From Lytechinus pictus (Eukaryota): a DNA stretch of 64,000 bases. The stretch spans positions 52,204,001-52,268,000 of the forward strand of contig NC_087249.1 of the NCBI RefSeq assembly GCF_037042905.1. Reading direction: 5' to 3'. The notes under the pieces were generated by a model. It made no database searches, was not told where the DNA came from, and was given only the letters and a program-made list of their open reading frames with translations. A program made the translations under genes and the position numbers. Of this stretch, positions 12,799 to 56,353 are shown piece by piece; position 1 is the stretch's first letter, and the number at the start of each line of letters is the position of its first letter.

Positions 12799-13148
12799 AT
12801 TATAACCCGACCTTTATTATCAGTCAACCTCGCTATGCCACTCGTCAGGATGTGATGATAATGGTAGGCTCTATAGATAGTCTCTCCATGCAGACAGACC
12901 ATCATTGCGGAGCTATGTCAATTGTAATACAGTGAATGGACAGATGACATGAAAGGATAGCTGCTAGCTGTGTTCGGGTTGCATGCTCGTATTACTTTGA
13001 TGTACACGCATGATATTACAGAATGAGAGTGTTTAACGTATGGCCGAGGCTATCTCATGCAACTCTGGATTTTCTGTTTACGACGCGCAGAGTCGTTTAT
13101 TACTCAACATCCTCAACATTCACTAATTTTACAGAAATTGGTGACAGC

Positions 13149-14120
13149 ATGTCGTCTGATCAAAAGGAACAGAAAACATCGCCAGTTCCGACGAATGAAA
13201 AGGGCGAATATAAAGGGGCTACGACTGCATTTCGCAACTGGATCACGGCCGATGGAGAATTTCAGCCGGAGAAAAGCCGTTATCATCTGTACGTGTCATT
13301 GGCATGCCCGTGGGCTTCCCGAACTCTCGTAACGCGTAAACTAAAGGGACTGGAGGATACCATTGGAGTTACGGTGGTAGATTGGTTGATGGGAGAGAAA
13401 GGATGGTTCTTTTCGAATGATAAACCGAAGACATCACTCGATACAGTCAACAACTGCAAATATATGAGGGAGATTTACGAGCTCGCAAGCCCGGGTTACA
13501 ACGGTCGCGTGTCTGTACCCGTACTTTGGGATAAGAAGAACAGAACCATCGTCAACAATGAATCTGCCGAGATCATGAGGATGTTCAACAAGGAGTTCAA
13601 TGCCTTTTCCGCCACCAAGGAACAAGGAGAATTGGATCTGTGCCCTCCAGATCTGTTGAAAGATATTGATGAGGTTAATTCCTGGATCTATGAGAACATC
13701 AACATTGGAGTTTACAAATGTGGCTTCGCCACCAGTCAGGAAGCTTATGATGATGCTGCTCCTAAACTGTTTGCCGCCCTTGACAGGGCCGAAGAAGTGT
13801 TGTCTAAATCCCGATATCTTTGCGGAGATAGAATGACAGAAGCCGACATTCGACTCTTCACTACTCTCGTCAGGTTCGATACGGTCTACGCCCATCATTT
13901 CAAGTGCAACAAGAAGCGGATCGTTGACTACCCGAATCTTTGGGGTTTCACCAGGGATATCTTCCAGACTCCAGGAGTAAGTGAGACTGTAGATCAAGAA
14001 CACATCCAGAAGCACTACCAAGTGAGCCACGTACACATCAATCCGAATCGCATAGTGGCCATTGGGCCCGACCTGGACTTTAATAGCCCACATGGAAGAG
14101 ACGTAAAATTTTCCAAGTAG
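13149..14120 (+). CDS. Glutathionyl-hydroquinone reductase (GST Xi class, YqjG/ECM4 family), 323 aa; an in-frame upstream ATG at 13023 would add 42 aa
   Basis: RYHLYVSLACPWA active site, VSVPVLWD, IVNNES, GVYKCGFA, TEADIRLFTTLVRFD, HFKCN, IQKHY..SH..INP..IV.IGP. The ORF is uninterrupted. Confidence 0.95.
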   Translation: MSSDQKEQKTSPVPTNEKGEYKGATTAFRNWITADGEFQPEKSRYHLYVSLACPWASRTLVTRKLKGLEDTIGVTVVDWLMGEKGWFFSNDKPKTSLDTVNNCKYMREIYELASPGYNGRVSVPVLWDKKNRTIVNNESAEIMRMFNKEFNAFSATKEQGELDLCPPDLLKDIDEVNSWIYENINIGVYKCGFATSQEAYDDAAPKLFAALDRAEEVLSKSRYLCGDRMTEADIRLFTTLVRFDTVYAHHFKCNKKRIVDYPNLWGFTRDIFQTPGVSETVDQEHIQKHYQVSHVHINPNRIVAIGPDLDFNSPHGRDVKFSK

Positions 14121-24900: not shown

Positions 24901-26064
24901 GAAAACGGTCTAATTGGTAGGCAAAATAAAAAATTTGATGAATTATATGTGGGTTCAGTTCTGATTTTTTTTTCAAAATTGGGACAATTTGACAAGCGTA
25001 ATGGAGAGAAACACAGGACATCTCATTTTCAGCAGACTGTTTTCACTTCATTTTGCTGAAGAAAAACACTAAATATATATACATGTATGAGTGATCAGAT
25101 TCTGTTGGTCAGGAACATAACTACTCCAAAGGATATTAAATGCAACTGATTGACTATTAGGAGTTGAGAATTACAGTACTATTATGATTCAAATTTAATA
25201 ATTCATCATCTAAAATTGTGAATATGAATAAATTGATTGATATCATAATTCAAGATACCATTTTATAATAAAAATTTTAGCAATTAATAGTGACATTCCC
25301 TTGAATACAGATAGGTTCATGAAATTCGTTGGATCTCCACCAGTGTGCTTTTAAATGGGAAAGCCCTCCGTGCAGGAGTTTACCTTTGTACGCAGATGTG
25401 GGTGTGGGAGTGGGTGCATCTGTTTATGCCCATGGATATATGCGAATAAAAAATTTAAAAAAGTGATTACATAATTAAATCATTGAAGATTATTATTTTC
25501 TGCCATTGATAATCAATAATTTGACAGATCCCATAACAAAACATGTACAAAACAAAAGGTACAAAATACAAAGAAATACATAAGAAATTCAAAAACAATA
25601 ATATACATTATTATTCACTGTGATATCATATTCTAAGGGCCGTACAATTATTTATAATGATTTAAATGCTATTTGTACCAAAAATATAAACATTTGAGCT
25701 GAAATTATCAAATTATAGCATAATGATCCAAAATATGCATAAATTTGCATAATTAATTAGCCGCAAACAAAAATAACAAGTTTTCCCGAAAGGTACACGT
25801 GCGTATGCAGGATTTTGCAGTATTCATGTCTGTGAAAGCGAATATGATTAAAGAACATTGTCGAAATAATATTCTGAATTGTCAATTTGGCAGCCATTTT
25901 GTATATGCAAATTAGGTGGTCAAAACATGAGAAATTAGCTTGGGAACCGATCTTATCAGATTCAGCATATATGAATTGTGTGAAATAGTCCAGTTCCCAA
26001 CTTTTACCCCAAAATGCTTCTTAAAATTTATATAGGCCTCTTTTTCCAGAATGTGTCTAGTCTA
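21980..26064. mobile_element. Non-autonomous long-TIR DNA transposon, Academ-like, inserted in GHR paralogue 2
   Basis: Termini TAGAC...GTCTA; imperfect TIRs of ~500 bp; 3-bp TSD TAG (21977-21979, 26065-26067). The superfamily is inferred from the termini and TSD only. Confidence 0.75.
23400..24800 (-). mobile_element. Highly decayed L2-type LINE fragment inside the Academ-like element
   Basis: PLFFKLYITPLGSIMWQHGLGIHFYADDIQLY...WMKVNFLELN, an RT YADD region. Boundaries are approximate. Confidence 0.7.
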
Positions 26065-26939
26065 TAGTGCTTCTGGATGTGTTCTTGATCTACAGTCTCA
26101 CTTACTCCTGGAGTCTGGTAGATATCCCTGGTGAAACCCCAAAGATTCGGGTAGTCAACGATCCGCTTCTTGTTACACTTGAAATGGTGGGCGTAGACCG
26201 TATCGAACCTTATGAGAGTGGTGAAGAGTCGAATGTCGGCTTCTGTCATCTTATCTCCACAAAGGTAACGGGATTTAGACAGCACTTCTTCGGCTCTATC
26301 AAGGGCGGCAAAGAGCTTGACGGCAGCTTCATCGTAAGCTTCCTGACTTGTTGCAAACCCGCATCGGTAAACACCATTGTTGATGTTCTCGTAGATCCAG
26401 GAGTTGATTTCATCAATATCTTTCAAAAGATCTGGAGAGCAGAGATCCAATTCTTGTTGTTCCTTGGTGGTCGAGAAGGAATTGAATTCATTGTTGAGCA
26501 TGCGTATGATTTCAGAGGACTCGTTGTTGACGATGGTCTTGTTTTTCTTATCCCACAGGACTGGCACCGACACACGTCCCGAGTAGTCAGGGCTAGCCAT
26601 TTCATAAACTTCCCTCAAACATTTACAGTTGTTCACAGTATCGAGTGACGTCTTTGGTTTATCTTCAGAGAAAAACCACCCTTTATCTCCGAGCAACCAG
26701 TCCACCACAGTGACTCCAATGACATCCTCCAGTCCCTTCAGTTTGCGGTAGATCAGTGTACGGTGGGCCCACGGGCAGGCGAGGGAAACGTAGAGGTGGT
26801 AGCGGCCCGACTCCGGCTGAAATTCCCCGTCGGCTGTTATCCAGTTTCGGAACACCGATGCATGGCGTTTAAATTCACCTTTCTTGGTTACACTGTCTTT
26901 CCATGAAGGTTCCACCTTCTGTCTCTTCGCAGAAGACAT
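26028..26939 (-). CDS. Glutathionyl-hydroquinone reductase paralogue 2, truncated by the transposon insertion at 26064 (reads through to RLDTFWKKRPI*)
   Basis: Canonical CPWAHR and NNGVYR motifs; collinear with paralogue 1 up to IQKHY. Confidence 0.88.
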   Translation of the reverse strand: MSSAKRQKVEPSWKDSVTKKGEFKRHASVFRNWITADGEFQPESGRYHLYVSLACPWAHRTLIYRKLKGLEDVIGVTVVDWLLGDKGWFFSEDKPKTSLDTVNNCKCLREVYEMASPDYSGRVSVPVLWDKKNKTIVNNESSEIIRMLNNEFNSFSTTKEQQELDLCSPDLLKDIDEINSWIYENINNGVYRCGFATSQEAYDEAAVKLFAALDRAEEVLSKSRYLCGDKMTEADIRLFTTLIRFDTVYAHHFKCNKKRIVDYPNLWGFTRDIYQTPGVSETVDQEHIQKHYRLDTFWKKRPI

Positions 26940-35810: not shown

Positions 35811-36062
35811 ATTTACTTACTTCATTAAATGCGAAACTTGAAATGTGTTTGTTAATAACATCAGACTTTTTACGAATACATCCAATAATATGGATGGATG
35901 ATCCCCCTCCCAACCCCCCCCCCCCCACATTCGACAATGGTGGATTTGCCCCAGAACATCATACCGTACGTATTCGGCTTTTTTAGAGATAAATATGAAA
36001 TGAATAATAATATTAATGATTATTTGTATTTCATTGTCTTTTCTTCAACTTTCAGGGGAGCA

Positions 36063-37400
36063 ATGGATGTCAATGAGATCGTCTCTAGTTTCGAATACAA
36101 TGATATTTCCTTTGTAAGGTTTGAGCAAACGGACCTGTACGGCGTCGCCAGGTCCAAGACGATTCCTGCCCAACACTTCAAGCATAAAGCTGTGAATGGA
36201 CTCAACTTCTACCTCGGTCACCTCGGCTATGATCCTCAAGCTGGATTTGTAGAGGACAGTGCCTATACTGCAGCGGCAGGGCAATGTGATGCTGTATGTT
36301 TCCCAGACCTTGAAACTTACCAAAAGCTACCATGGAGCAAGAGGACTGCTCGGATTCTGATCGAGCCAACGTACAAGGGAAAGTTAGTTGAAGCCCATCC
36401 GAGGGTGGTGGCAAGGAGACAACTGGAGAAGCTGAAGGAGATGGGATATTCGCTTCTGTCAGCTCACGAGCACGAGTTCTATCTGGTGGAGAAGGAATCT
36501 CGGAAACCCATTGATGACGTTGTCAACATCCGGTCTACGATTCGGCTGGCTGCTTGTGAAGATATAGTGTACACCTTTTTGGATGGATTGATAGGTGCTG
36601 GTGTTGATATGGAATGCGCAGAGACCGAGTACGGCCCTGGGCAAATTGAGATCTCATACAGACCAGCGTTTGGGATTCGAGCAGCGGACAACGCTCATAC
36701 TTACAAGACAGGAATTAAGGAGATGGCTCTCAAGAATGGCTACATGGCAACCTTCATGTCCAAACCATTCCCCAACAGGAGCGGATCAGCTTGTCATTTC
36801 TGCCATTCCTTGTGGGACATCCCAGGTGAGACACCTCTACTCTACGATGCCGACCGTCCTACAGGGATTACATCCGTTGGTGAACATTGGATTGCGGGTC
36901 TCCTCGAGCACACCCCTGCAATCTCTTTGCTTATGGCACCGACTATCAACTGTCTAAAGCGATATCTCCCAAACTCCTTTGCACCATCCAATGCAACGTG
37001 GGGCATAGACAATCGCACGTGCGCTTTTCGAGTAAAACTGAATGGTAAAGAAGGTACCTATATCGAGAATCGATTAGGGGCCAGTGGTTGCAATCCTTAC
37101 ATCGCCTTAGCTGCTACCGTGGCTGCAGGAATGGATGGTATCAACAGGAAACTACCATTGCCACCCTGTGTGAAAGAAACCGGAAATGCCTACAACCTTG
37201 AGGACATCCCACCTGGTACTGCGAACGTTCCAACCGATATGGAAGAAGCCATGAGAACCCTCCAAGCAGACGATATCATTACTTCGGCTCTTGGGAAAGA
37301 GTTCATAGAATGCTTCCTTGCTGCAAAGAGACATGAAGTTCTTCTACAAGAAAAGAATGATGAAAATTGGGAACAAGATCTCTTCTTTGAATACATGTAG
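36063..37400 (+). CDS. Lengsin-like GSI-fold glutamine-synthetase-family protein, 445 aa; possibly a gamma-glutamyl-amine ligase
   Basis: FVRFEQTDLYGVARSKTIP (lengsin-like), EHEFY, ETEYGPGQIEI, ATFMSKP, SGSACHFCHSLW, WGIDNRT..RV, IENR, NPY. The acceptor ttttcttcaactttcag at 36055 places the start at ATG 36063 rather than 35898. Confidence 0.92.
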   Translation: MDVNEIVSSFEYNDISFVRFEQTDLYGVARSKTIPAQHFKHKAVNGLNFYLGHLGYDPQAGFVEDSAYTAAAGQCDAVCFPDLETYQKLPWSKRTARILIEPTYKGKLVEAHPRVVARRQLEKLKEMGYSLLSAHEHEFYLVEKESRKPIDDVVNIRSTIRLAACEDIVYTFLDGLIGAGVDMECAETEYGPGQIEISYRPAFGIRAADNAHTYKTGIKEMALKNGYMATFMSKPFPNRSGSACHFCHSLWDIPGETPLLYDADRPTGITSVGEHWIAGLLEHTPAISLLMAPTINCLKRYLPNSFAPSNATWGIDNRTCAFRVKLNGKEGTYIENRLGASGCNPYIALAATVAAGMDGINRKLPLPPCVKETGNAYNLEDIPPGTANVPTDMEEAMRTLQADDIITSALGKEFIECFLAAKRHEVLLQEKNDENWEQDLFFEYM

Positions 37401-41956: not shown

Positions 41957-42855
41957 CGGAAACCCATTGATGATGTTTCAACATCCGGTCTACGATTCGG
42001 CTGGCTGCTTGTGAAGATATAGTGTACACCTTTTTGGATGGATTGATAGGTGCTGGTGTTGATATGGAATGCGCAGAGACCGAGTACGGCCCAGGGCAAA
42101 TTGCGATGTCCTACAGACCAGCGTTTGAGATTCGAGCAACGGACAACGCTCATACTTACAAGACAGGAATTAAGGAGATGGCTATCAAGAATGGCTTCAT
42201 GGCAACCTTCATGTCCAAGCCATTCCCCAACAGGAGTGGATCAGCTTGTCATTTCTGTCATTCATTGTGGGACATCCCAGGTGAGACACCTCTACTCTAC
42301 GATGCCGACCGTCCTAAAGGGCTAACATCCGTTGGTGAACATTGGGTTGCGGGTCTCCTCGAGCACACTCCTGCAATCTCTTTGCTTATGGCACCGACTA
42401 TCAACTGCCTAAAGCGATATCTCCCAAACTCCTTTGCACCATCCAATGCAACGTGGGGCATAGACAATTGCACGTGCGCTTTCCGAGTAATACTGAATGG
42501 TAAAGAAGGTACCTATATCGAGAATCAATTATGGGCCAGTGGTTGCAATCCTTACATCTCCTTAGCTGCTACCGTTGCTGCAGGAATGGATGGTATCAAA
42601 AGGAAGCTTCCATTGCCACCCAGTGTCAAAGAAACCGGAAATGCCTACAACCTTGAGGACATCCCACCTGGTACTGCAAACGTTCCAACCGATATGGAAG
42701 AAGCCATGAGAACCCTCCAAGCAGACGATGTCATTACTTCGGCTATTGGGAAAGAGTTTATAGAATGCTTCCTTGCTGCAAAGAGACATGAAATTCTTCT
42801 ACAAGAAAAGAATGAAGAAAATAGGGAACAAGATCTCTTCTTTGAATACATGTAG
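41957..42855 (+). pseudogene. 5'-truncated tandem duplicate of the lengsin-like gene
   Basis: Homology starts at cggaaacccattgatga; 1-bp deletion near 41977; substitutions GQIEI->GQIAM, DNRT->DNCT, IENR->IENQ; 3'UTR homology continues to ~43160. Confidence 0.88.
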
Positions 42856-43400: not shown

Positions 43401-46400
43401 TTTCATTTCATTTCGTTTATTTCCATTTTCAACAATTACAGTTTATTTTGTACATTTTAACATACAAATAACAAAACATATTTCAAGTATTCCTGTACAA
43501 AAATTATATTCAATATTATTACATATCAGGTTGGAAATGGAGGAGGCTGCTAAAAAGCGGAGCTTGTAGAGTGCAGCCTCCTAATAAATATTCTTGTAGT
43601 TGCATAACATATAAAAATTAAAATAACAACTAGAGCATGAACCAGTTAAATTAAAAGGAAATAGGGGAAATTAAAATAGAAAAGGAAATAAAAAAAAGAG
43701 AGATTAAAGGTCTCCAGAATCCAGCCCCAGCACTCACAGACGGACCTCGTTGATCAACAGGAAAACGAAAGAGATGGAAAAGCGTACGTGACATGATAAT
43801 CATGTTTGATTTAAAAAAAATACAAGAGTTTGAGTGATGAAGAGTTAAATTCAATGGTTATCTTGGAGAAATTTTTTAAACTTATATTTGAAAGAATTAA
43901 GGCTTGGTGATTCTTTGATGTTTTTATTAATAGTTCCCCAGAGTCTAGGGCCTTCAAAAGTAAAAATAGATTTTGCAAGGATGGTCCGGGGTAGTGGTAA
44001 GTGGAATTCATCTGATTGACGTGTGGGATATTTGTGAAGAGTTTTGTTTTTGTTAAATGAAGAATTAAATATGAATGGTAACATATTATTGTTTAACTGA
44101 TACATGAATTGACCTAAGTTATATTGGTACAGTGTTTTTGTATCGCCTGCATAGCAGAGCGAGACTATAGGCGCCGCTTTTCCGACGGCGGCGGCGGCGG
44201 CGGCGGCGGCGTCAACATCAAATCTTAACCTAAGGTTAAGTTTTTGAAATGACATCATAACTTAGAAAGTATATGGACCTAGTTCATGAAACTTGGACAT
44301 AAGGTTAATCAAGTATTACTGAATATCCTGCCTGAGTTTCAGGTCACATGACCAAGGTCAAAGGTCATTTAGGGTCAATGAACTTAGACCATGTTGGGAA
44401 AATTATTTTCAAAATCTTAACCGAAGGTTAAGTTTTGGAAATGACATCATAACTTAAAAAGTATATGGACCTAGTTCATGAAACTTGGGCATAAGGTTAA
44501 TCAAGTATTAGTGAACATCCTGCTCGAGTTTCAGGTCACGTGACCAAGGTCAAAGGTCATTTAGGGTCAATGAACTTTGGTCAAGTTGGGGGTATTTGTT
44601 GAATTACTATCATAACTTTGAAAATTTATGGATCTAGTCCATGAAACTTAGACATAAGGTTAATCAAGTATTAGTGAACATCCTGCCTGAGTTTCAGGTC
44701 ACATGACCAAGGTCAAAGGTCATTTAGGGTCAATGAACTTTGGCCAAGTTTGGGGGTATTTGTTGAATTACCATCATAACTTTGAAAATTTATGGATTTA
44801 GTTCATGAAACCTGGACATTAGGTTAATCAAGTACCACTGAATATCCTGTGCGAGTTTCAGGTCACATGACCATGGTCAATGGTCATTTAAGGTCAATGA
44901 ACTTTGGCCGTGTTGGGGGTATATGTTAAATTACCATCCTAGCTCTGAAAGTTTATGGATCTAGTTCATAAAACTTGGACATAAGAGTAATCAAGTATCA
45001 CTGAACATCTTGTACGAGTTTCAGGTCACATGACCATGGTCAAAGGTCATTAAAGGTCAATGAACTTTGGCCGTGTTGGGGGTATTTGTTGAATTACCAT
45101 CCTAACTGTGAAAGTTTATGGATCTAGTTCATAAAACTTGGGATATAAGAGTAATCAAGCATCACTGAACATCCCCTGTGAGTTTCAGGTCACAAAACCA
45201 AGTCAAAGGTCAATAAACTTAGGCCATGTTGGGGTAATTGTTGAAGTGCCATCATAACTTTGAAAGTTTATGGATAGAGTGAATGAAATGTGGACATGGG
45301 TGTAGTTGACAGTCTTAAGTCTCCGTTCAAATGTCATTTATGGTCAATGAACGTGGTATTATGTCATAATATGAATGATGTTTTTGTGAATGATTATTTT
45401 ATAGTAGTTTTCAAAGTTAGCACTGCTGCTATATTAAATTGCGTAATGCAGGCGAGACTGCCAGAGGCGTTCCACTTGTTATTTTTAGAATGTTATTGTT
45501 AAAAACAACTCATCTGTGTGAGATCTCCAGGACAAGTTGAAAATAACACGCAATGCCTTCTTTTGTAAAAGTAATATTCTATCAAGGTAGGTTGAGTGTG
45601 TATTTCCCCAAACAATTGCTCCATAATTTAAATATGGTAAAATTAATGTTGAATAAAGCATTTTTAGGGAGGAAGTTGGAAGAAAAAACTTAACTTTGTA
45701 TATAACACCAATATTGCGTGAAATTGTATGACATATAAAGTCAATGTGTGTTTTCCAAGATAATTTGTTGTCTATTATGAGACCTAAAAATTTTGTTGTA
45801 GTAACAACTTCAATGTCTTTATTGTCCAATTTGATATGAAATGGCAATTGTTCTAAAGAATTGCTAAAAAGCATGCATTTCGTTTTTTGTACATTAATTG
45901 ACAATTTGTTAGCCCTAATCCATTGTACCAATTTATCCAGTTCAGTGTTCAGTACATTTATTAAAATATCGGGGTTAGGATGAGAGTATAGTACATTTGA
46001 ATCATCTGCAAAAAGGACATAAGATAATATTTCAGAGGAGTTCTGGATGTCATTTATATAGATTATAAATAAAAGAGGGCCCAGGAGGCTGCCTTGGGGA
46101 ACACCCCAGTTAACATTTTGTAGAGAAGAATTTTTTTTCATTTATGCTTACGAATTGTTTACGATTTACGAGGTAGTTTCTGAACCACTCCAAGGCCTTC
46201 CCACGAACTCCGTAATTTTCAAGTTTGTAGAGCAGTATTTCATGATTTATAGTGTCAAAGGCCTTGGAGAGGTCCAGAAAAACACCTATTGTATGTTCAA
46301 AGTTGTCAATAGCTTTTGTGATTTTGTCAATAAATGAGAGAGTGGCATGAGATGTTTTTGGCGAAATCCAAATTGAAAATCAGAGATTATATTATATTTA

Positions 46401-47170
46401 TTCAAAAAATTTAATAATCTTGTGTAGATCACCCTTTCCATAACTTTAGACAAAGTAGGTAATAAAGCTATCGGTCTATAGTTACATACATTAATCTTTT
46501 CTCCTTTTTTGTGCACTGGTATTATCTTTGATATTTTCATATTGTCAGGCGCGACGCCATTACTTAAAGAAAGGTTGAATATGTATACTAATGGATCAAC
46601 AATATATTCTATAACATTCTTTAATAAAATATTGTCAATACCATCGTGACCACAGCTTTTTTTGTTTTTTAAGTTGTTCACTATATCTATTATTTCATTT
46701 CTATGTACTGGTACTAAAAATAAAGAATTAGGGTTTGGTTGGTGAATGAAATCCGTAATTTTTTTTTGTGTTAATGGTATATTGTCTGCAAGACTTTTTC
46801 CAATTTGTGTAAAGTATTGATTAAATATATCAGCTATACGAAAAGAATCATGAATTTCAACATTATTGTGCTTTATTGTTTTTATGCGTGCTTTTGTGCT
46901 TTGTTTATTTATGGCAGTGTTTATTGTTTTCCATGTTTTATTGATGTCGTGTTTGAAACGAATTAATTGATTTGTGAAATATTTCCGTTTTTCACTCCGC
47001 AATAATTTAGTGAGGGTATTTTTATATGTAGTATATTTACGATGTGACTTTTCTGAGCGATTAATTTTATCGGCATAGTATAAGTTATTTTTGCGATTTA
47101 TTGATCGTAATATTGATTTCGATATCCAAGGAAGTCTTGGACTCTTTTTATAATTATTACATTTACTGAC
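43401..47170 (-). mobile_element. 5'-truncated L2/CR1-group LINE, interrupted by a Helentron-like element
   Basis: PWIS...NYRPIA...QFGFR (46286-47170), GVPQGSLLGP/FADDS (45485-46141), C-terminus (43851-44135), (GAAAT)n tail at ~43401. Confidence 0.92.
44136..45480 (+). mobile_element. Non-autonomous Helentron/DINE-like element, copy 2, with ~162-bp tandem units
   Basis: Inserted in a T-run with no TSD; the LINE reads ILKI|KTLYQ across it. Subterminal inverted repeat TCGCCTGCA/TGCAGGCGA; (GGC)n near the 5' end. Confidence 0.78.
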
Positions 47171-48081
47171 CAATGGTACATTATTATTACCCCAGTCATC
47201 GGATCCTTGCATGCCCGCATACAATGCATGCACCTTCTCCTCTCCCTGGGGAGCATTCCAACAAGAGTTCCAAGACTCAATTGCTAGGCATACTACATAT
47301 AGTCTTTCGCATCCTACCGGGTACCCATTTAACACCTGGGTGGAGAGTGGCAAAATTGTGGATTGACGCCTTGCCAAAGGACGCTAGACCATAGTGGGAT
47401 TCGAACACACGACCCTCAGTCCTTTTATTTTAATTTTTTTATATAATTGTGCAATATCAACAGTCTTTGTGCAGTATATAGGCCTATATTATTTTTCGAA
47501 TTCGTCTTCGACCTCTTTCATATCCCTTCTTTTTGTTTATCTCCATTTTTTTTCTTTCTCTCCAACTCTCTCCCCTCCCTCTCTCTCTCTTTCTTTATTT
47601 CTTTCTTCCTTTCTTTCTTTCTATCTTTATTTCTGCTTTTTATCTTTCCTTCATATCAATAAACGAATATAGGTGTGTTTTTTGGCTATAGAAAGATATT
47701 AAATTACAGAGTGTGGGAGTGGAAACGATGGGAAACATAATTCAGAGAATTGAAAGTAGGATGAAGATGTTAATAGAGAAGGTCGGAGGGATGGAAAAGA
47801 TATCTAAGCATGCGACGGAGATCGGATTAATTAGTTCGTTTTAATAAAAGCAGAAAAAAATTGAAAAAAAAAGATTTTATTAAAAATCCGTCAAATAATA
47901 ACGGAATTATGATTTTTTTTAAGTTTTTGTTTTTTATACAAGCAGTTCATCCATCTTTCGTGTCGTGTGATATAGATATCATAAAATGCAATTTTCTTTA
48001 TTGAAAGGGATTTTATTTGTGGGGTGATTCTTATTTAGACAAATCGTTTTATATCCCCTTCTATAAAAAGAAAAGTATATA

Positions 48082-51010: not shown

Positions 51011-51268
51011 TACACTCTAAAAATATTGGGTAGAAATGCTCCATGAGGGTAATTATGTGTCCAATCAACATTGGTCATTTCTTTTGGGCATTTTTCAGTT
51101 ATCAAATGTGATGAAAATTTTGCCTATTCTAAAGTAATTGCTGCTTATTTTTTAACCTTACTGGACAATATGCTTCCAGCAATGGGTAAAATACTGCCCC
51201 CAATTGGTTGGACACATAATTACCCTCGTGCTGGTTATAATTTTACCCAATACTTTTTTTACAGTGTA
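51011..51268. mobile_element. MITE with TACACT...AGTGTA ends
   Basis: tacactctaaaaatattgggta / tacccaatacttttttacagtgta; internal inverted repeat gagggtaattatgtgtccaa. Confidence 0.75.
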
Positions 51269-52507
51269 GTGGTATAATCTCAAAACATATCAACATTAAG
51301 TGATATTCCTATACCGGAAGTTACCACATCAATTTTTTTGACATTTACTTTGGCATCTGCCATTGGGCATTTTCACGGTAACTGACGTTACACGGCACAA
51401 TTTTACACACTTCCCATTGTGTGTATGATTATCTCTAAAACAACAAATGATGGGAGTTTGCTTAAAAGCAATAATTTGTTGTTTTAGAGATAATCATACA
51501 CACAATGAAAAGTATATAAAATTTGTTTAATCTGTAATTGATACCCACGTCCTGTTTATATAATGACAATTTAGCACTACAGATTCATGACGTATACGAA
51601 CCCACAAATGTTTCGCTGCGGACATAACGTTACGGACGTTTCATTATTTTTTCTTACTTTGACATCCTAACGTTAATTTTAGAGACAAACATAATTTTGA
51701 AAACGAATATGGGTATAGTCAATAATTTTTGGTAAATTCTGAACTATGAAAACACATTGAAATCAATTCGTCAGAATTGGTAATTGTAGAGTAACACTTT
51801 GTTTTCGAGAAAAAAAATAATATGCAAGAACGTGCATTATATGCCTTAATAGGCTTCACCGTGTACTCAAATACCACTCAGATCTATTCTATGTTGTGGT
51901 ATGGATCCTAAATCTTTCACTACAGTTCATGTATTTTAACAGTTTTTACACATTTATGATTTCAAAAAAGGGAAACAGTTTCCTTGGAAATGTCTTTTTA
52001 GGGGGAAATATAAAATGACCTATCCTTCCATTCTACTATCAAGTATCATCATATCATCAAATCAAATCATAACTTCATTTATAGTATACTTGTATTTAAT
52101 TAAAGTCATCTATAAACCGATTTAGTATTGGTGTAGTCATTAGGATATAAGGGTTCAGGACCCACATCCCAGTCCATCACCGGCCAACAGAAAAAAAACT
52201 ATGCACTACCTGACATACTCTCTTTTATATCGTTTCTGCACAGCGTAATAACTTTCGACAAATATAGTGTACATTTTGAAGAAGTAATATATCACCGATG
52301 CATTGTAAAAGCTTAATATCTATATATAAATCAAACAAGATGAACACTCCTCTTCTCTAAACTACTTTATATGCCCTCTTGCTAATTATTTTCCCGACAT
52401 TTTTTTAATTCACACTTTAATCACGTTAAACCACGATTGATTAAAGGATATGAAAAAAGTACATCTCGTCACATAATTATCATCAGGCTATATAATTTTA
52501 TATCAAT

Positions 52508-54220
52508 TTACTTATTTTCTTCTAAATTTCCTTTTTGCTGCTCACAAGTTGCATCTGGTTCATTACCACCAGCGGCATATTCTTCTCGATGCTCGATGAC
52601 CTCAACGTCAATGTTATGGCACGGTGTCGTATTCGTTTCCGTCTTGATGGCACCATCAATGATGAGGGACCCATGGTGGTTCAATGTTGATCTCAAGCTG
52701 TCGATGTCGACATGGTCAGGTAAGGCTATGATGTGGCGGAGGATGCGGCTCGTTTGGACTCGAGGATCGTGGTGGTCGTGTCGAAACTCGACATGGAGAT
52801 CCCTATCGCCATGAAGCTGCACGTTGATGATGACGTCGTCTGGCTTGAAGCCTGGTTTGAGAGGAACCGTGACATGGAACTTGGTTGCGTCGGTTCCGAA
52901 GCTGACCTCTCCACAGCGATGTCCATCTTCCTGACTCTGAGGATGATGACGATGATGATCTTGATGGTGACGAGATGAAGCTGCGCCATCCGGTGAATCG
53001 TAATCGTCGTGGTGGTCGACGTGGGATTCATGATGGTGGACATAGAAAGCGCCCTGGCGATGCAAGCCATGGTGCTGGTGGTGATCAGGATGGGAGGCAT
53101 GGTGGGCGTGGCTCCTATCCAAGCCAGCATGGTGATGGGTGTGAGTTGGCATCTCATCAATGTTGACCGCTTCCTTGTCGAAATGATGACGATGAGTATG
53201 GATATGATAATGAGAGACATATCCAGTGTGGTCCTTCTGGTAGAGGTGATGCGGATCCATATGATAGATATTTCTACCAGTTGTCCCAACCATCCATGGA
53301 TGCAGGTGTTGGTAGGGATAGTGAGATGCGTGCCCGTGGTGATAGAGAGGTGTAAGAGGATATGCCATATCGGGATTCAACACGTGATGAGAGGTGTAGA
53401 AGGGGTGGTAATGATGGGTGATAAGGTTGGGATGGGTTGGGCTTGGATGATGAGAGGAATCATGGTGACTTGGATAAACCCCCGGCTGGTGATGAGGGGA
53501 GTAGAGATGGTGGTTAGAGTGGTGGTAAGGGTGCATATTGGTTGGATGATGCAGATAGCTGGTTGTCCCTCCCTCGTGTTCTGGAAAACCTCTAAGATGG
53601 GCGTGGTCGTGTGGAGTGGTAGCTGCTTGATACACAGGAACTGAGCTTGAGTGGGATGCAGTTGGATGGTAGGAATGGATATCGGGATGGTGATCCAACG
53701 GTGCGTCATGATGTTGAGGTGGGTCATGGTGGGGTGCAGAATGACCATGCTGAAGGTGAGACGACGGATGAGGGTGGCCGGCGGGAGGAGGAGGAGGTAC
53801 AGCGTTACCATGGGGATGAGATGGATCCAGGGGATGATTTTGCGGATGTGGATGAGGAGGAGCAATACCATGGACTTGAATGTCATGCTGAGGATGTATC
53901 ACCGGTAGGTGCGGATGATCGGGGATGACCCGATGCTGCATTAGACTAATCTCACCTTCCCTGATGGGATGAGGGTCATGGTGAGGCGAGAAATGACCTA
54001 CAGCTCCAGCATGTGGTCTTCCTCCTGCAACAGGTCCATGCCTTGCCAGAGGATGAGGTGACATGCCATGATGATCTTGATGATTAGTTCCTCCAGTGGT
54101 TCGGGGATGGTGAGCTTGAGCTGGATGGCTGTATGCCCCTTCATGATGAGAAGCACCAAGTTCATGCCGAAAGTCGTAGCCCGGATCTCGGCGAGATGTT
54201 GGGATCCAGCGTACAGGCAT
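52508..54220 (-). CDS. His/Pro-rich protein with a C-terminal alpha-crystallin (small HSP) domain, 570 aa, single exon
   Basis: KFHVTVPLKPGFKPDDVIINV...SRILRHIIALPDHVDIDSLRSTLNHHGSLIIDG followed by an IxV motif (IDVEV). The ~435-aa N-terminus is about one-quarter His. First ATG at 54220. Confidence 0.85.
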   Translation of the reverse strand: MPVRWIPTSRRDPGYDFRHELGASHHEGAYSHPAQAHHPRTTGGTNHQDHHGMSPHPLARHGPVAGGRPHAGAVGHFSPHHDPHPIREGEISLMQHRVIPDHPHLPVIHPQHDIQVHGIAPPHPHPQNHPLDPSHPHGNAVPPPPPAGHPHPSSHLQHGHSAPHHDPPQHHDAPLDHHPDIHSYHPTASHSSSVPVYQAATTPHDHAHLRGFPEHEGGTTSYLHHPTNMHPYHHSNHHLYSPHHQPGVYPSHHDSSHHPSPTHPNLITHHYHPFYTSHHVLNPDMAYPLTPLYHHGHASHYPYQHLHPWMVGTTGRNIYHMDPHHLYQKDHTGYVSHYHIHTHRHHFDKEAVNIDEMPTHTHHHAGLDRSHAHHASHPDHHQHHGLHRQGAFYVHHHESHVDHHDDYDSPDGAASSRHHQDHHRHHPQSQEDGHRCGEVSFGTDATKFHVTVPLKPGFKPDDVIINVQLHGDRDLHVEFRHDHHDPRVQTSRILRHIIALPDHVDIDSLRSTLNHHGSLIIDGAIKTETNTTPCHNIDVEVIEHREEYAAGGNEPDATCEQQKGNLEENK

Positions 54221-54308
54221 GATCAATTCTTATTTGATGTTTGTGTAGTATACTGTTCTGCCTTATGAAACCAGTCGATTTGTTTGGCGGAAAATGAAAT
54301 TGCAGCTT

Positions 54309-54373
54309 CTTTTATACATCTTAGTGATATGCACAGGGCAAAATGGGAATCGGTGACAAGCCTGGATGCGCAC
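54309..54373 (-). promoter_or_regulatory. TATA box and a metal-response-element core upstream of the His-rich sHSP
   Basis: TATAAAAG on the minus strand at 54309-54316; TGCGCAC (TGCRCNC) at 54367-54373. Confidence 0.35.
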
Positions 54374-56353
54374 AAACAAAAGCCGATGCAAAATCCCAGA
54401 AATATAGAATTCAAAGAGAAAAAACAGCTAATTAAACGGGAAAATAAGGAGAGAGATGGAAAGAAGAGAGAGAGAGAGAGATTGAATTCATTGTCATTCT
54501 TTGTAATGGATACACCTCTGAAAATGACGGATTGTGTAAATATTGCGCCTTTTAAATCATTTTGGTTGGCACGGTAAGTACACATTATGACTCTCGATTT
54601 CTTTCTCTGTTAGATAGACCAATATAAGCAATAAAAGGCAAAACAGTATGGTGTAGAGATACTTCATGTCACTCGTGAGTGTGCTTGTTGTGATGAATCG
54701 CCCGCATTTTGAACCCTCCAAGATCTATCATCCTATTTGTTGTGACTTGTGACAGATGTCATAAGAGGACCGCCTCCACCTCTCCCTTACGTTTATTTTG
54801 CCTGATGACAAACTAAACACAAACATGACAAAAGTGCATGCATGTTAATAAAATCATTCATATCGATATTAAATTCTACTGAATACCAGAAACAATAAGC
54901 TCCTCTGGAGGAGCAGTCTTGCTGGATTTTTTGAAATCCCACCAAGATTGTATCAAAACGATACGTTCTTCGTACTTTAAATTGGCATTAACAACGGCGT
55001 CGCCGACGACGACAACAACATTTGAACAATAAGGATGAGAGATGCAGAATTTGCATGAGACATAATCTTTGTCTTTCCGTTGATGGCCACAAACAAACTT
55101 GATTATTATGGCATGTACATTATGTTTAAACGTAATTATACATGATTGCAAATCGATAGTCTTATTCCAGTGCATGGTTTTCTTGGCATTCTTTATATTT
55201 TACATCAATATCATTGAGCCCGCATAGATGAATTTATTCCATAATAATGGAATGTCATTATTCAGTATTAGAGATAGGCCTATCTGCATTTCATGAAACG
55301 TCCGCCCTTTGAAATTTCAGAGTTTCATTGCTCTGCGTGGGGAGGAATATCTTCCTCCTGGTATATACATTTCTTCTCCTCTGTTTTGCGAGTTAAAGAT
55401 ATGCACTGTCGCTAAATTGTTTGTAATCAAATCTGATCTTTGCAAGGGAAGTAATCAATATATCTTTGAGAATACCCGTTTCTCGGGCCCTTTTCATGGC
55501 AAATAAATTGATAAAACGCTTAAGCTTCCGCGCTTTGCGCGGGGTTATTATTATTTTAATTTCCTCCATTGCCTTTTTTGTGCGTTCACAATCACTTTTG
55601 AAAGCAAGGTTCATGAAAACGAGGTTCAAAAGCACAATATAGTCAACTGAATTGGAGCTGATATAGGTACTAGAGACAAGAGAGACGGCTCCTTTTCATT
55701 TTAATTTATGAAACACCAAAAGCTTCGCGCTTCGCGCGGGAGGGGGAAACTCCCCCCCCCCTGCACCCACCCCCTAGGTGCTTATAAAATATTTTGAAAT
55801 ATATGTTTATATGATCCAATATCTTATTTTGAGATTGGGTTAACTTTGAAAAATAATTATTGTTTTGTATAGTATCCTCTTCCTATGGGTATATAAGGTT
55901 GTGTGTTTGTTTGTTTTATTTCCTCCTGCATTCATAAATGATAACAAACTTTCAAAATATACCATGTACGAAATAATTGATAACATAGTTAAACAGATAT
56001 TTAAAGTAATTTTCAAAATTCAAATGAAATTTCATAATCACTACTGTAAGCCTCCATGATCATAATCAACAGTCATCGTATATTGTCAACATATGTTATT
56101 GGTCACCTTGCTTGCCGAATTCGTTTGTTTTCAAAACCAATCCCATTTTATTTCAATTAGATTCAATTAAATTCTTACGAGCGAGCGCAGAAAGCAGGAG
56201 AAACATATTTTTTTCCTGTAGAATATTTCATTTCAGGTAGCCAATTTAGCATTAAGCTAAAGTCTTCCAGCGGGTACCACCATTACTGGCCATTCCCCAT
56301 TATCATGACAGAAGGTCTTTGGTATGACTATAATTTATAAAGCTGTATAGGTA

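What the first reader, a model, noticed from the sequence alone, without database searches (positions are those of the whole stretch)
52508..54220. Giant small heat-shock protein with a ~435-aa His-rich N-terminus
Seen: about 106 His in the N-terminal region by my count, in successive Pro-His, Tyr-His and Asp-His blocks. The DNA is not a simple repeat, and there is no signal peptide. A single alpha-crystallin domain with an IxV tail follows, and the position matching alphaB R120 appears to be His. Established: sHSPs are usually 12-43 kDa and oligomerise; His-rich disordered regions bind metals and can phase-separate with pH. Inference: an oligomeric pH- or metal-switched chaperone, condensate or metal buffer. 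An upstream MRE core weakly agrees.
Basis: partly seen in the sequence, partly recalled or inferred. Interest (0 to 1): 0.72.

Follow-up and report, generated by a model that had tools for sequence, protein, structure and literature searches.

The report
Histidine-rich giant small heat-shock protein

Summary
Window 52508-54220 (- strand) is one uninterrupted 570-codon gene of Lytechinus pictus. RefSeq predicts it as XP_054755315.1, 'histidine-rich glycoprotein-like', a name based on composition only.

- **Composition:** residues 1-435 hold exactly 106 His (24%) and no Cys, and are predicted disordered.
- **Domain:** residues ~437-531 are a divergent alpha-crystallin domain. Pfam HSP20 scores only 18.3 bits against a cut-off of 20.8. 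However, an exhaustive phmmer search hits bona fide HSP20 proteins, the AlphaFold model's top 50 PDB matches are all sHSP domains, and a beta6+7 homodimer is modelled.
- **Motifs:** the alphaB-R120 position is His496, and a conserved I-D-V-E-V tail follows.
- **Conservation:** orthologues exist in L. variegatus (89%) and one other, unnamed species (56%). Indels are in frame, dN/dS is 0.30 in both halves, and His content is retained.
- **Transcription:** contigs of one run, probably RNA, cover exactly the stretch from the TATA box to the polyA signal, unspliced. Three other RNA runs show zero reads.
- **Promoter:** the upstream MRE core is not conserved, and there is no proximal HSE.

The arm's calculated net charge flips from +53 to -10 between pH 6.0 and 7.4. 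The pH/metal-switch function remains inference. I class it as a new variant of a known kind.

The parts
52508..54220 (-). Complete single-exon CDS, 570 aa plus stop (64.7 kDa). RefSeq model XP_054755315.1, 'histidine-rich glycoprotein-like'.
   Evidence: 99% identical to the nr L. pictus protein. dN/dS against L. variegatus is 0.30, with all indels in frame.
52916..54220 (-). N-terminal region, aa 1-435: 106 His (24%), 58 Pro, 20 Tyr, 27 Asp, 2 Lys, 0 Cys. Predicted disordered; calculated pI about 7.0. Conserved short islands at aa 76-104, 170-179, 269-278, 343-350, 383-392 and 405-416.
   Evidence: AF2 full-length pLDDT is 25-42 with no secondary structure. The ESM Atlas model has mean pLDDT 0.40.
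52628..52888 (-). Alpha-crystallin domain, aa 445-531 by the Pfam envelope (the conserved block runs aa 437-526). Metazoan type with a long beta6+7 strand.
   Evidence: Pfam HSP20 18.3 bits. phmmer hits to bona fide HSP20 proteins. Sip1 E 9e-4. AF2 core pLDDT 83-90. Foldseek top 50 are all sHSP ACDs.
52733..52735 (-). Codon of His496, the position aligned with alphaB-crystallin R120 / HSP27 R140. It lies in the modelled beta6+7 dimer interface (aa 487-499).
   Evidence: Alignments. Conserved in all orthologues. Interface residues. The numbering against alphaB is from my own knowledge of its sequence.
52598..52612 (-). C-terminal I-D-V-E-V (aa 537-541), an I-x-I/V-type motif inside the conserved island aa 534-546.
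   Evidence: Predicted as a beta strand in the AF2 domain model (fragment residues 108-118).
54311..54316 (-). TATAAA box at -96 from the ATG, inside a proximal promoter block (-115 to -16) that is 92% identical to L. variegatus.
   Evidence: Contig coverage of run X1 stops between 54181 and 54287.
51512..52507 (-). Inferred 3' UTR of about 1 kb. The ATTAAA polyA signal lies at 51526-51531.
   Evidence: signal 976 nt after the stop. X1 contigs end at 51512.
54634..54931 (-). Upstream block (-414 to -711) that is 83-95% identical to L. variegatus, the best-conserved stretch upstream of the proximal promoter. Candidate cis-regulatory module.
   Evidence: Function not tested.
54367..54373 (+). 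Probably not functional.
   Evidence: one match against 0.46 expected per 1.5 kb. Not conserved in L. variegatus.

Best explanation
Shown:
- This is a single-exon, TATA-driven gene that searches find only in sea urchins. It is expressed in some samples and not in others.
- It encodes a 64.7-kDa, highly divergent metazoan-type small heat-shock protein.
- Its C-terminal 135 residues form an alpha-crystallin beta-sandwich. The model pairs two copies through the long beta6+7 strand.
- A conserved I-x-V tail follows, the motif other sHSPs use to build oligomers.
- His496 replaces the interface arginine (alphaB R120).
- The 435-residue N-terminal region is disordered, Cys-free, almost Lys-free and 24% His.

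Inferred:
- The ACD and tail supply dimerisation and oligomerisation.
- The His-rich arm is the regulated, client- or metal-contacting part. With about 106 imidazoles titrating near pH 6-7, its calculated net charge goes from about +53 (pH 6.0) through about +7 (pH 6.8) to about -10 (pH 7.4).
- Small cytosolic pH shifts, or Zn/Cu binding to its HH, HxH and HxxH arrays, would therefore change arm-arm and arm-client interactions. That would switch assembly, holdase/sequestrase activity or condensation.
- It could at the same time act as an oxidation-resistant His-based Zn reservoir, as proposed for HSPB5.
For: Identity as an sHSP relative:
- phmmer of aa 430-570 against 1.84 billion representatives gives 27 hits at E<=1e-3. 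All nine non-orthologous hits tested are strong PF00011 proteins.
- The best solved relative is C. elegans Sip1 (E 9e-4).
- The AF2 domain model has core pLDDT 83-90. Its top 50 Foldseek PDB matches are all sHSP ACDs, with TM by target up to 0.81.
- Homodimer model: score 0.57, best of 3 controls 0.08. That mark was reached by 21 of 30 proteins solved as pairs of one chain and by 0 of 23 solved as single chains. Runs agree in at least 71% of contacts and partner pLDDT is at least 63. The interface is aa 487-499, the beta6+7 strand.

Real gene:
- Orthologues at 89% and 56% identity.
- dN/dS is 0.30 for the arm and 0.29 for the ACD plus tail, with dS 0.12 and only in-frame indels.
- NTR His content is kept at 24%, 24% and 27%.
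- The TATA promoter is conserved.
- X1 contigs at depth about 95-140 span 51512 to about 54200, with none at 54287-55600. These limits match the TATA box and the ATTAAA signal.

Arm properties:
- Disorder.
- Charge titration and motif counts: 29 HH, 20 HxH, 23 HxxH.
- None of the 27 nearest ACD relatives is His-rich; all have at most 4.5% His.

Precedents:
- HSPB5 has 5.1% His, is Cys-free, and binds Zn with high affinity through its disordered NTR (PMC12803927).
- Sip1 is embryo-expressed and its activity is pH-dependent (PMC9800568; PMC9458469, citing Fleckenstein 2015).
- Yeast Hsp42 uses a long disordered NTE for sequestrase activity (PMC9458469).
Against: - No biochemical property was or could be tested here.
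- Pfam HSP20 is below its gathering threshold.
- The ACD sits on a long unresolved branch with no supported sister, so chaperone function may have been lost.
- The interface Arg is replaced by His.
- No HSE lies within about 1 kb of the ATG, and the MRE is not conserved. There is therefore no promoter evidence for heat or metal induction.
- Three RNA runs gave zero reads on the gene in about 8 million sampled reads each.
- X1 is only guessed to be RNA.
- X1 variants are 16 non-synonymous to 7 synonymous, and 22 of the 23 lie in the arm. Much of the arm is therefore constrained by composition rather than by position.
- The apparent preferential conservation of His (82% against 45% for other residues) is partly an alignment effect. 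A locally shuffled control gives 61% and 22%.
- The dimer pass may reflect the model's memory of solved sHSP dimers.
Confidence: 0.55

Rival explanations
1. It is primarily a cytosolic metal store or buffer, a His-based functional analogue of metallothionein. The ACD serves only as an oligomerisation module, and there is no meaningful chaperone activity.
For: - 106 His in dense HH/HxH/HxxH arrays with no Cys in the arm.
- The ACD is highly diverged and has lost the conserved interface Arg.
- The HSPB5 precedent as a conditional Zn reservoir (PMC12803927).
- The bovine alphaA ACD has been solved Zn-bound, and that structure is among the fold matches (3l1e).
Against: - There is no conserved MRE and no promoter evidence for metal induction.
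- The ACD plus tail is as constrained as the arm (dN/dS 0.29), and the I-x-V motif is conserved. This suggests that more than a passive scaffold is selected.
- No metal data exist.
Confidence: 0.2
2. It is a structural or condensate-scaffold protein of one particular cell type that merely reuses an sHSP domain. Precedents, from my own knowledge, are ODF1/HSPB10 in sperm tails and the crystallins in the lens. The His/Tyr/Pro-rich arm would drive coacervation or cross-linking.
For: - On/off expression between samples: depth about 100-140 in X1 against zero reads in X12-X14.
- The His-Tyr-Pro composition of aa 211-340 recalls His/Tyr-rich coacervating proteins of marine invertebrates (my own knowledge).
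- The whole protein is calculated to be close to isoelectric at pH 6.8.
Against: - There is no signal peptide or hydrophobic segment, so it is not a conventionally secreted biomaterial protein.
- There are no tandem repeats of the kind typical of such materials.
- The cell type is unknown.
Confidence: 0.15
3. It is a homologue of vertebrate histidine-rich glycoprotein, as the RefSeq name says.
For: Only the database name and the high His/Pro content.
Against: - Pfam finds no cystatin-type or any other domain besides the weak HSP20 match.
- There is no signal peptide-like segment.
- There is no GHHPH-type tandem repeat.
- The only folded domain is an ACD.
Confidence: 0.01
4. It is a decaying or non-functional low-complexity ORF, with no selected protein product.
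For: - Zero reads in three RNA runs.
- Many non-synonymous variants in the arm.
- Very low structure-prediction confidence.
Against: - A 570-codon open frame is kept in three species, with only in-frame indels and dN/dS 0.30.
- 56% identity is retained to the most distant orthologue, with conserved motif islands.
- The TATA promoter is conserved.
- Transcript-shaped coverage is seen in X1.
Confidence: 0.04

Closest known systems
C. elegans Sip1 (PDB 4ydz/4ye0), the embryo-expressed, pH-regulated sHSP
   Same: - Best solved relative by sequence (E 9e-4) and by fold.
- Metazoan-type ACD.
- Sip1's activity is reported to be pH-dependent and it is expressed mainly in embryos (PMC9458469, PMC9800568). 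That is the same kind of switch proposed here.
   Different: - Sip1 is a normal-sized sHSP; the chain in 4ydz is 159 residues.
- It has a short NTR and keeps Arg at the R120 position.
- Identity to it is only about 26%.
- It has no His-rich arm.
Human HSPB5 / alphaB-crystallin as a Zn-binding sHSP
   Same: - Cys-free, His-enriched, disordered NTR that is required for high-affinity, reversible Zn binding (PMC12803927).
- Same ACD fold, with TM by target up to 0.81.
   Different: - HSPB5 has 9 His in 175 residues (5.1%). This protein has 118 in 570 (20.7%), with 106 in the arm.
- The arm here is 435 residues, several times the length of the whole 175-residue HSPB5.
- R120 is His here.
- The gene is intronless and is found only in sea urchins.
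Yeast Hsp42 and other long-NTE sHSP 'sequestrases'
   Same: A single ACD preceded by an unusually long disordered N-terminal extension that is essential for function (PMC9458469).
   Different: - Hsp42's extension contains a prion-like domain, and the C. elegans sequestrases have aromatic- and Met-rich NTEs (PMC9458469). The arm here is His/Pro/Asp/Tyr-rich.
- There is no sequence relationship outside the ACD.
Other L. pictus ACD proteins
   Same: - The same genome encodes at least four more ACD loci.
- Two of them carry long low-complexity N-terminal regions: 305 aa on C12 and a 394-codon ORF on C3.
- The best single-ACD sequence match is a conventional echinoid-type sHSP of about 168 aa (P0005 and its C7 locus; E 1.3e-10, 34% identity).
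   Different: - None of them is His-rich.
- The tree gives this protein no supported sister, and it sits on a stem of about 1.6 changes per site.
Classical histidine-rich proteins (HRG, HRC, histatin, the CatSper1 N-terminus)
   Same: His clusters that confer pH and metal sensitivity. The CatSper1 N-terminus is a His-rich disordered pH/temperature sensor (PMC13674862).
   Different: - Those proteins contain 9-17% His (PMC13674862, Table 2), against 24% over 435 residues here.
- None carries an ACD.
- HRG is secreted and built on cystatin-like domains (my own knowledge); none was found here.

Membership tests
Small heat-shock proteins (HSP20 / alpha-crystallin domain, PF00011) | Sequence match to the ACD profile above Pfam's gathering score | tested here: not met
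   18.3 bits against a cut-off of 20.8 (E 0.0026). Orthologue P0003 scores 18.8 bits. The PF00011 scan of the own genome did not report this locus.
Small heat-shock proteins (HSP20 / alpha-crystallin domain, PF00011) | Significant sequence similarity to bona fide members | tested here: met
   phmmer against 1.84 billion representatives gave E 1.7e-15, 1.3e-10, 3.7e-09 and so on. All nine non-orthologous hits tested score 42-283 bits on PF00011. PDB Sip1 E 9e-4.
Small heat-shock proteins (HSP20 / alpha-crystallin domain, PF00011) | ACD beta-sandwich fold | tested here: met
   AF2 model mean pLDDT 75, core 83-90, with eight strands. The Foldseek top 50 PDB matches are all sHSP ACDs. This is a predicted, not a solved, structure.
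Small heat-shock proteins (HSP20 / alpha-crystallin domain, PF00011) | Metazoan-type dimer through an antiparallel beta6+7 strand | tested here: met
   In silico only. Score 0.57, best of 3 controls 0.08. The mark was reached by 21 of 30 proteins solved as pairs of one chain and by 0 of 23 solved as single chains. At least 71% of contacts agree between runs and partner pLDDT is at least 63. The interface is aa 487-499. The pass may come from the model's memory of solved sHSP dimers.
Small heat-shock proteins (HSP20 / alpha-crystallin domain, PF00011) | C-terminal I-x-I/V anchoring motif | tested here: met
   I537-D-V539-E-V541 lies in a conserved island, aa 534-546. Binding to the beta4/beta8 groove was not tested.
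Small heat-shock proteins (HSP20 / alpha-crystallin domain, PF00011) | Conserved interface arginine (alphaB R120 / HSP27 R140) | tested here: not met
   His496 occupies the column. Several of the nearest relatives also lack Arg there: N in P0005, Q in P0012, H in P0025 and P0027. The Arg is therefore typical rather than strictly defining.
Small heat-shock proteins (HSP20 / alpha-crystallin domain, PF00011) | Subunit mass of 12-43 kDa | tested here: not met
   64.7 kDa, of which 49.6 kDa is the arm.
Small heat-shock proteins (HSP20 / alpha-crystallin domain, PF00011) | Large dynamic oligomers and ATP-independent holdase activity | not testable with these tools
   Needs SEC-MALS or native MS, and aggregation assays.
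Small heat-shock proteins (HSP20 / alpha-crystallin domain, PF00011) | Heat-shock element in the promoter (common, not defining) | tested here: not met
   No three-pentamer HSE with at least 8 of 9 core bases lies within about 1 kb of the ATG. The only such matches are at -1083 and -1398.
Histidine-rich glycoprotein (the RefSeq name) | Cystatin-like domains, a secretion signal and a GHHPH-type repeat region | tested here: not met
   No Pfam domain other than the weak HSP20 match. No hydrophobic N-terminus. No such repeats in the protein or the DNA. The defining features listed are from my own knowledge of HRG.
Hsp42-type sHSP sequestrases | Long disordered N-terminal extension | tested here: met
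   435 residues, predicted disordered.
Hsp42-type sHSP sequestrases | Prion-like domain, or an aromatic- and Met-rich NTE that drives sequestration (PMC9458469) | tested here: inconclusive
   The arm has 20 Tyr. The whole protein has only 21 Gln, 16 Asn and 8 Met. His dominates the composition. Sequestrase activity cannot be tested here.

The most novel reading that the evidence does not exclude
The protein is a maternal or early-embryo 'pH-meter' sHSP. It would be calculated to be near isoelectric, and so condensation-prone, at the acidic cytosolic pH of the unfertilised sea-urchin egg. The fertilisation alkalinisation (PMC9100012, citing Johnson, Epel and Paul 1976 and Shen and Steinhardt 1978) would then make it strongly anionic. 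This would dissolve the assemblies and release stored clients or Zn as part of metabolic derepression. His496 in the dimer interface would be a second titratable switch. Nothing here shows expression in eggs. The idea rests only on the calculated charge curve (whole protein -0.7 at pH 6.8, -16 to -21 at pH 7.2-7.4), the sample-specific expression and the Sip1 analogy.
Probability: 0.07. Interest if true: 0.85.

Novelty: new variant of a known kind. Interest (0 to 1): 0.55.

Why it matters
- sHSP function is thought to be tuned by the disordered N-terminal region. In 2025 human HSPB5, with only 9 His, was proposed to use that region as a high-affinity, oxidation-proof Zn reservoir (PMC12803927).
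- This sea-urchin protein is a natural extreme of that design. It has 106 His in a 435-residue Cys-free arm, and a His in place of the disease-linked interface arginine (disease link from my own knowledge).
- It offers an experimentally tractable test of three questions. Can His content alone turn an sHSP into a pH- or metal-gated chaperone, condensate or buffer? Which matters, residue position or composition? Can an ACD tolerate a 50-kDa disordered arm?
- L. pictus is a laboratory model species, so knock-outs are a realistic option.
- It also corrects a misleading database name. 'Histidine-rich glycoprotein-like' hides an ACD protein that Pfam thresholds miss.

Tried and rejected
- **Pfam on the whole protein:** only a sub-threshold HSP20 match and nothing in the arm.
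- **ESM Atlas look-alikes for the arm:** no usable feature hit. The structural rows have TM at most 0.19 and are meaningless.
- **Word-based homologue searches** (whole protein, and the ACD region within long proteins): only the same three proteins. No long-armed relative outside them was found. The breadth among sea urchins cannot be judged, because the 50% clusters collapse them.
- **Source of P0003:** no contig look-up was possible, so its species is not established. It is UniParc UPI00022291FC.
- **ACD tree:** unresolved, 15 of 26 inner branches open, bootstrap not settled, no supported sister. I draw no origin from it.
- **Literature:** no paper mentions the accessions or a His-rich sea-urchin sHSP.
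- **Raw RNA reads of X12-X14:** zero on the gene. This is uninformative about where the gene is expressed, and the tissues are coded.
- **HSE scan:** nothing proximal.
- **MRE:** rejected as evidence.
- **Preferential conservation of His positions:** weakened by my shuffle control, 61% by alignment alone. I keep only the claim that His content and several motif islands are conserved.
- **HRG homology:** rejected.
Full report
**1. What is there**

- The window is low-GC DNA (about 29-46% GC in 2-kb windows) with sparse ORFs. It belongs to Lytechinus pictus: the ORF product is 99% identical to nr XP_054755315.1.
- On the - strand, 54220 to 52508 is one open frame of 570 codons plus stop. The ATG at 54220 is the first in the frame, with an in-frame TAA four codons upstream.
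- The predicted protein is 64.7 kDa.

**2. The observation**

- The arm has 58 Pro, 20 Tyr, 27 Asp, only 2 Lys and no Cys.
- Thirty-residue windows show the described succession of Pro-, Tyr- and Asp-flavoured His blocks.
- The DNA is not a repeat. TRF finds four tiny arrays scoring 30-43, and both His codons are used (75 CAT, 43 CAC).
- There is no hydrophobic segment anywhere.

**3. Is the C-terminus an alpha-crystallin domain?**

- Pfam alone would say 'not quite': HSP20 scores 18.3 bits against a gathering score of 20.8. RefSeq's name and the databases' precomputed Pfam field ('-') show that the domain has gone unrecognised.
- An exhaustive phmmer search of residues 430-570 against 1.84 billion representatives found 27 proteins at E<=1e-3. 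After the orthologue, the best E-values were 1.7e-15, 1.3e-10 and 3.7e-09.
- All nine non-orthologous hits that I scanned are strong PF00011 proteins, 42-283 bits.
- The best solved relative by sequence is C. elegans Sip1 (E 9e-4), followed weakly by alphaA-crystallin and HSPB7.
- AlphaFold2 on a 29-sequence alignment gives an eight-strand sandwich with core pLDDT 83-90.
- All 50 top Foldseek PDB matches are sHSP ACDs: Sip1, Hsp27, alphaA (including the Zn-bound form), alphaB, HSPB6 and HSPB7. TM by target reaches 0.81.
- The homodimer test passed. The score was 0.57 and the best of 3 controls 0.08. That mark was reached by 21 of 30 proteins solved as pairs of one chain and by 0 of 23 solved as single chains. 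Runs agree in at least 71% of contacts and partner pLDDT is at least 63. The interface is fragment residues 58-70, which are residues 487-499, the long beta6+7 strand typical of metazoan sHSPs. Because such dimers are solved, this shows likeness, not binding.
- In the alignments, S-R-I-L-R-H-I-I-A-L-P lines up with S-R-E-F-T-R-R-Y-T-L-P of the canonical L. pictus paralogue. His496 therefore occupies the alphaB R120 / HSP27 R140 column (numbering from my own knowledge). It is invariant in the orthologues.
- Several of the nearest relatives also lack Arg there.
- The tail motif I-D-V-E-V (537-541) lies in a conserved island.

**4. Is the gene real?**

- Conservation:
  - Orthologues are L. variegatus XP_041470029.1 (89%, single exon on a chromosome-scale scaffold) and a 566-aa UniParc protein of unestablished species (56%).
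  - Between the two Lytechinus species dS is 0.12.
  - dN/dS is 0.30 for the arm and 0.29 for the ACD plus tail.
  - The three indels are all in frame.
- His content:
  - The arm keeps 24%, 24% and 27% His in the three species.
  - Against the distant orthologue, 82% of arm His and 45% of other residues are retained.
  - My locally shuffled control shows that alignment alone yields 61% and 22%.
  - Real homology extends through the arm, but 'His positions are specially conserved' is only weakly supported.
  - Seven islands in the arm are nearly invariant: aa 76-92, 94-104, 170-179, 269-278, 343-350, 383-392 and 405-416.
- Copy number in the genome:
  - The His-rich gene is single-copy in the own genome.
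  - Four other ACD loci exist, two of them with long but not His-rich N-terminal regions.
- Uniqueness among relatives:
  - None of the 27 nearest ACD relatives exceeds 4.5% His.
  - The ACD tree is unresolved, and the trio sits on a long stem.

**5. Expression and gene structure**

- A TATAAA lies at -96, inside a proximal block that is 92% identical between the two species.
- An ATTAAA signal lies 976 nt after the stop.
- Contigs of run X1 lie on 51512 to about 54200 at summed depth about 95-140, with no joints. Nothing lies on 54287-55600. X1 is from L. pictus, holds 90 million letters of contigs, and its library is not on record, so 'RNA' is a guess.
- These limits match the polyA signal and the TATA box. 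The simplest reading is an unspliced mRNA of about 2.8 kb that includes the whole His-rich part. This is good but not conclusive evidence.
- Three deep rRNA-depleted RNA runs (X12-X14) gave zero reads on the gene in about 8 million sampled reads each. Expression is therefore sample-specific, and the sample identities are coded.
- The X1 haplotypes differ from the reference at 23 coding sites, 7 synonymous and 16 non-synonymous, and 22 of them lie in the arm. This indicates weaker position-specific constraint in the arm.
- No HSE with at least 8 of 9 core bases lies within about 1 kb of the ATG.
- The single MRE core (-153, opposite strand; 0.46 expected by chance per 1.5 kb) is absent from L. 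variegatus.

**6. How it probably works**

- Shown:
  - An ACD with a modelled beta6+7 dimer and an I-x-V tail.
  - A disordered arm: AF2 pLDDT 25-42 with no secondary structure, and ESM Atlas pLDDT 0.40.
- Calculated:
  - With His pKa set to 6.3, the arm's net charge is +53 at pH 6.0, +7.5 at pH 6.8, -0.4 at pH 7.0 and -10 at pH 7.4 (pI 7.0).
  - The whole protein is isoelectric at about pH 6.8.
  - The arm has 29 HH, 20 HxH, 23 HxxH and 26 HxxxH pairs.
- Inferred:
  - The ACD and tail build oligomers.
  - The arm is a titratable, metal-binding element that gates assembly, client holding or sequestration, or condensation. It may also buffer Zn.
- Precedents:
  - HSPB5 binds Zn through its disordered NTR and is proposed as a Cys-free Zn reservoir (PMC12803927).
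  - Sip1 is pH-dependent and embryo-expressed (PMC9458469, PMC9800568).
  - Hsp42 needs its long NTE for sequestration (PMC9458469).
  - The His-rich CatSper1 N-terminus acts as a pH/temperature sensor. Classical His-rich proteins carry 9-17% His (PMC13674862), less than here.

**7. Comparison and verdict**

- It works like an sHSP and belongs to the ACD superfamily by transitive sequence similarity, fold and modelled dimer.
- It fails three customary criteria: the Pfam threshold, the mass range and the interface Arg.
- It is not a histidine-rich glycoprotein.
- The architecture (a single ACD with a very long disordered arm) is known. The extreme His composition is new, as is the R120-position His and, so far as these databases show, the restriction to sea urchins.
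- I file it as a new variant of a known kind. It is of moderate to high interest to the sHSP and metal-homeostasis fields, and its function is still entirely untested.

Noticed in passing
window 13023-14120 (+) and 26028-26939 (-): Two single-ORF (apparently intronless) glutathione S-transferase genes with GST_N_2 and GST_C_2 domains, 365 and 303 aa, about 12 kb apart on opposite strands.
   Followed up: partly
window 35898-37400 (+) and 42022-42855 (+): Two glutamine-synthetase-like ORFs: 500 aa (Gln-synt_C 296 bits) and 277 aa (241 bits, possibly partial). L. variegatus also has a Gln-synt_C gene convergent with the sHSP gene (L001 17121-19825, -), so the neighbourhood is syntenic. An ACD protein next to a lengsin-like protein, both lens-protein families in vertebrates, is a curious coincidence and nothing more for now.
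   Followed up: partly
window 4363-5562 and 45485-47377 (-): Reverse-transcriptase (RVT_1) ORF fragments. These are retroelement remains between the GS-like genes and the sHSP gene, and near the window's start.
   Followed up: partly
window 54634-54931: The upstream block at -414 to -711 is 83-95% identical to L. variegatus. Its best parts exceed what dS of 0.12 would predict for neutral sites. It is a candidate enhancer of the sHSP gene.
   Followed up: no
window 51200-51493: Repeat-like stretch just beyond the gene's 3' end. All four runs lay reads or contigs on it, mostly 95-99% alike and only partly fitting, with X1 depth 440-800. It is probably a dispersed, transcribed repeat.
   Followed up: no
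window about 52407-52415, against L001 about 11.8-12.4 kb: The L. variegatus 3' UTR region carries roughly 500-600 extra bases relative to L. pictus, shown by a long alignment gap. This is probably an insertion in L. variegatus or a deletion in L. pictus.
   Followed up: no
L004 967-1884 (+) = G000 C12; L006 1441-2625 (-) = G000 C3: Two further L. pictus ACD proteins with long low-complexity N-terminal regions. The first is 305 aa and Gln/Ser/Thr/Pro-rich; the second is a 394-codon ORF, Ser/Asp/Glu-rich. Long-armed sHSPs therefore seem to recur in this genome.
   Followed up: partly
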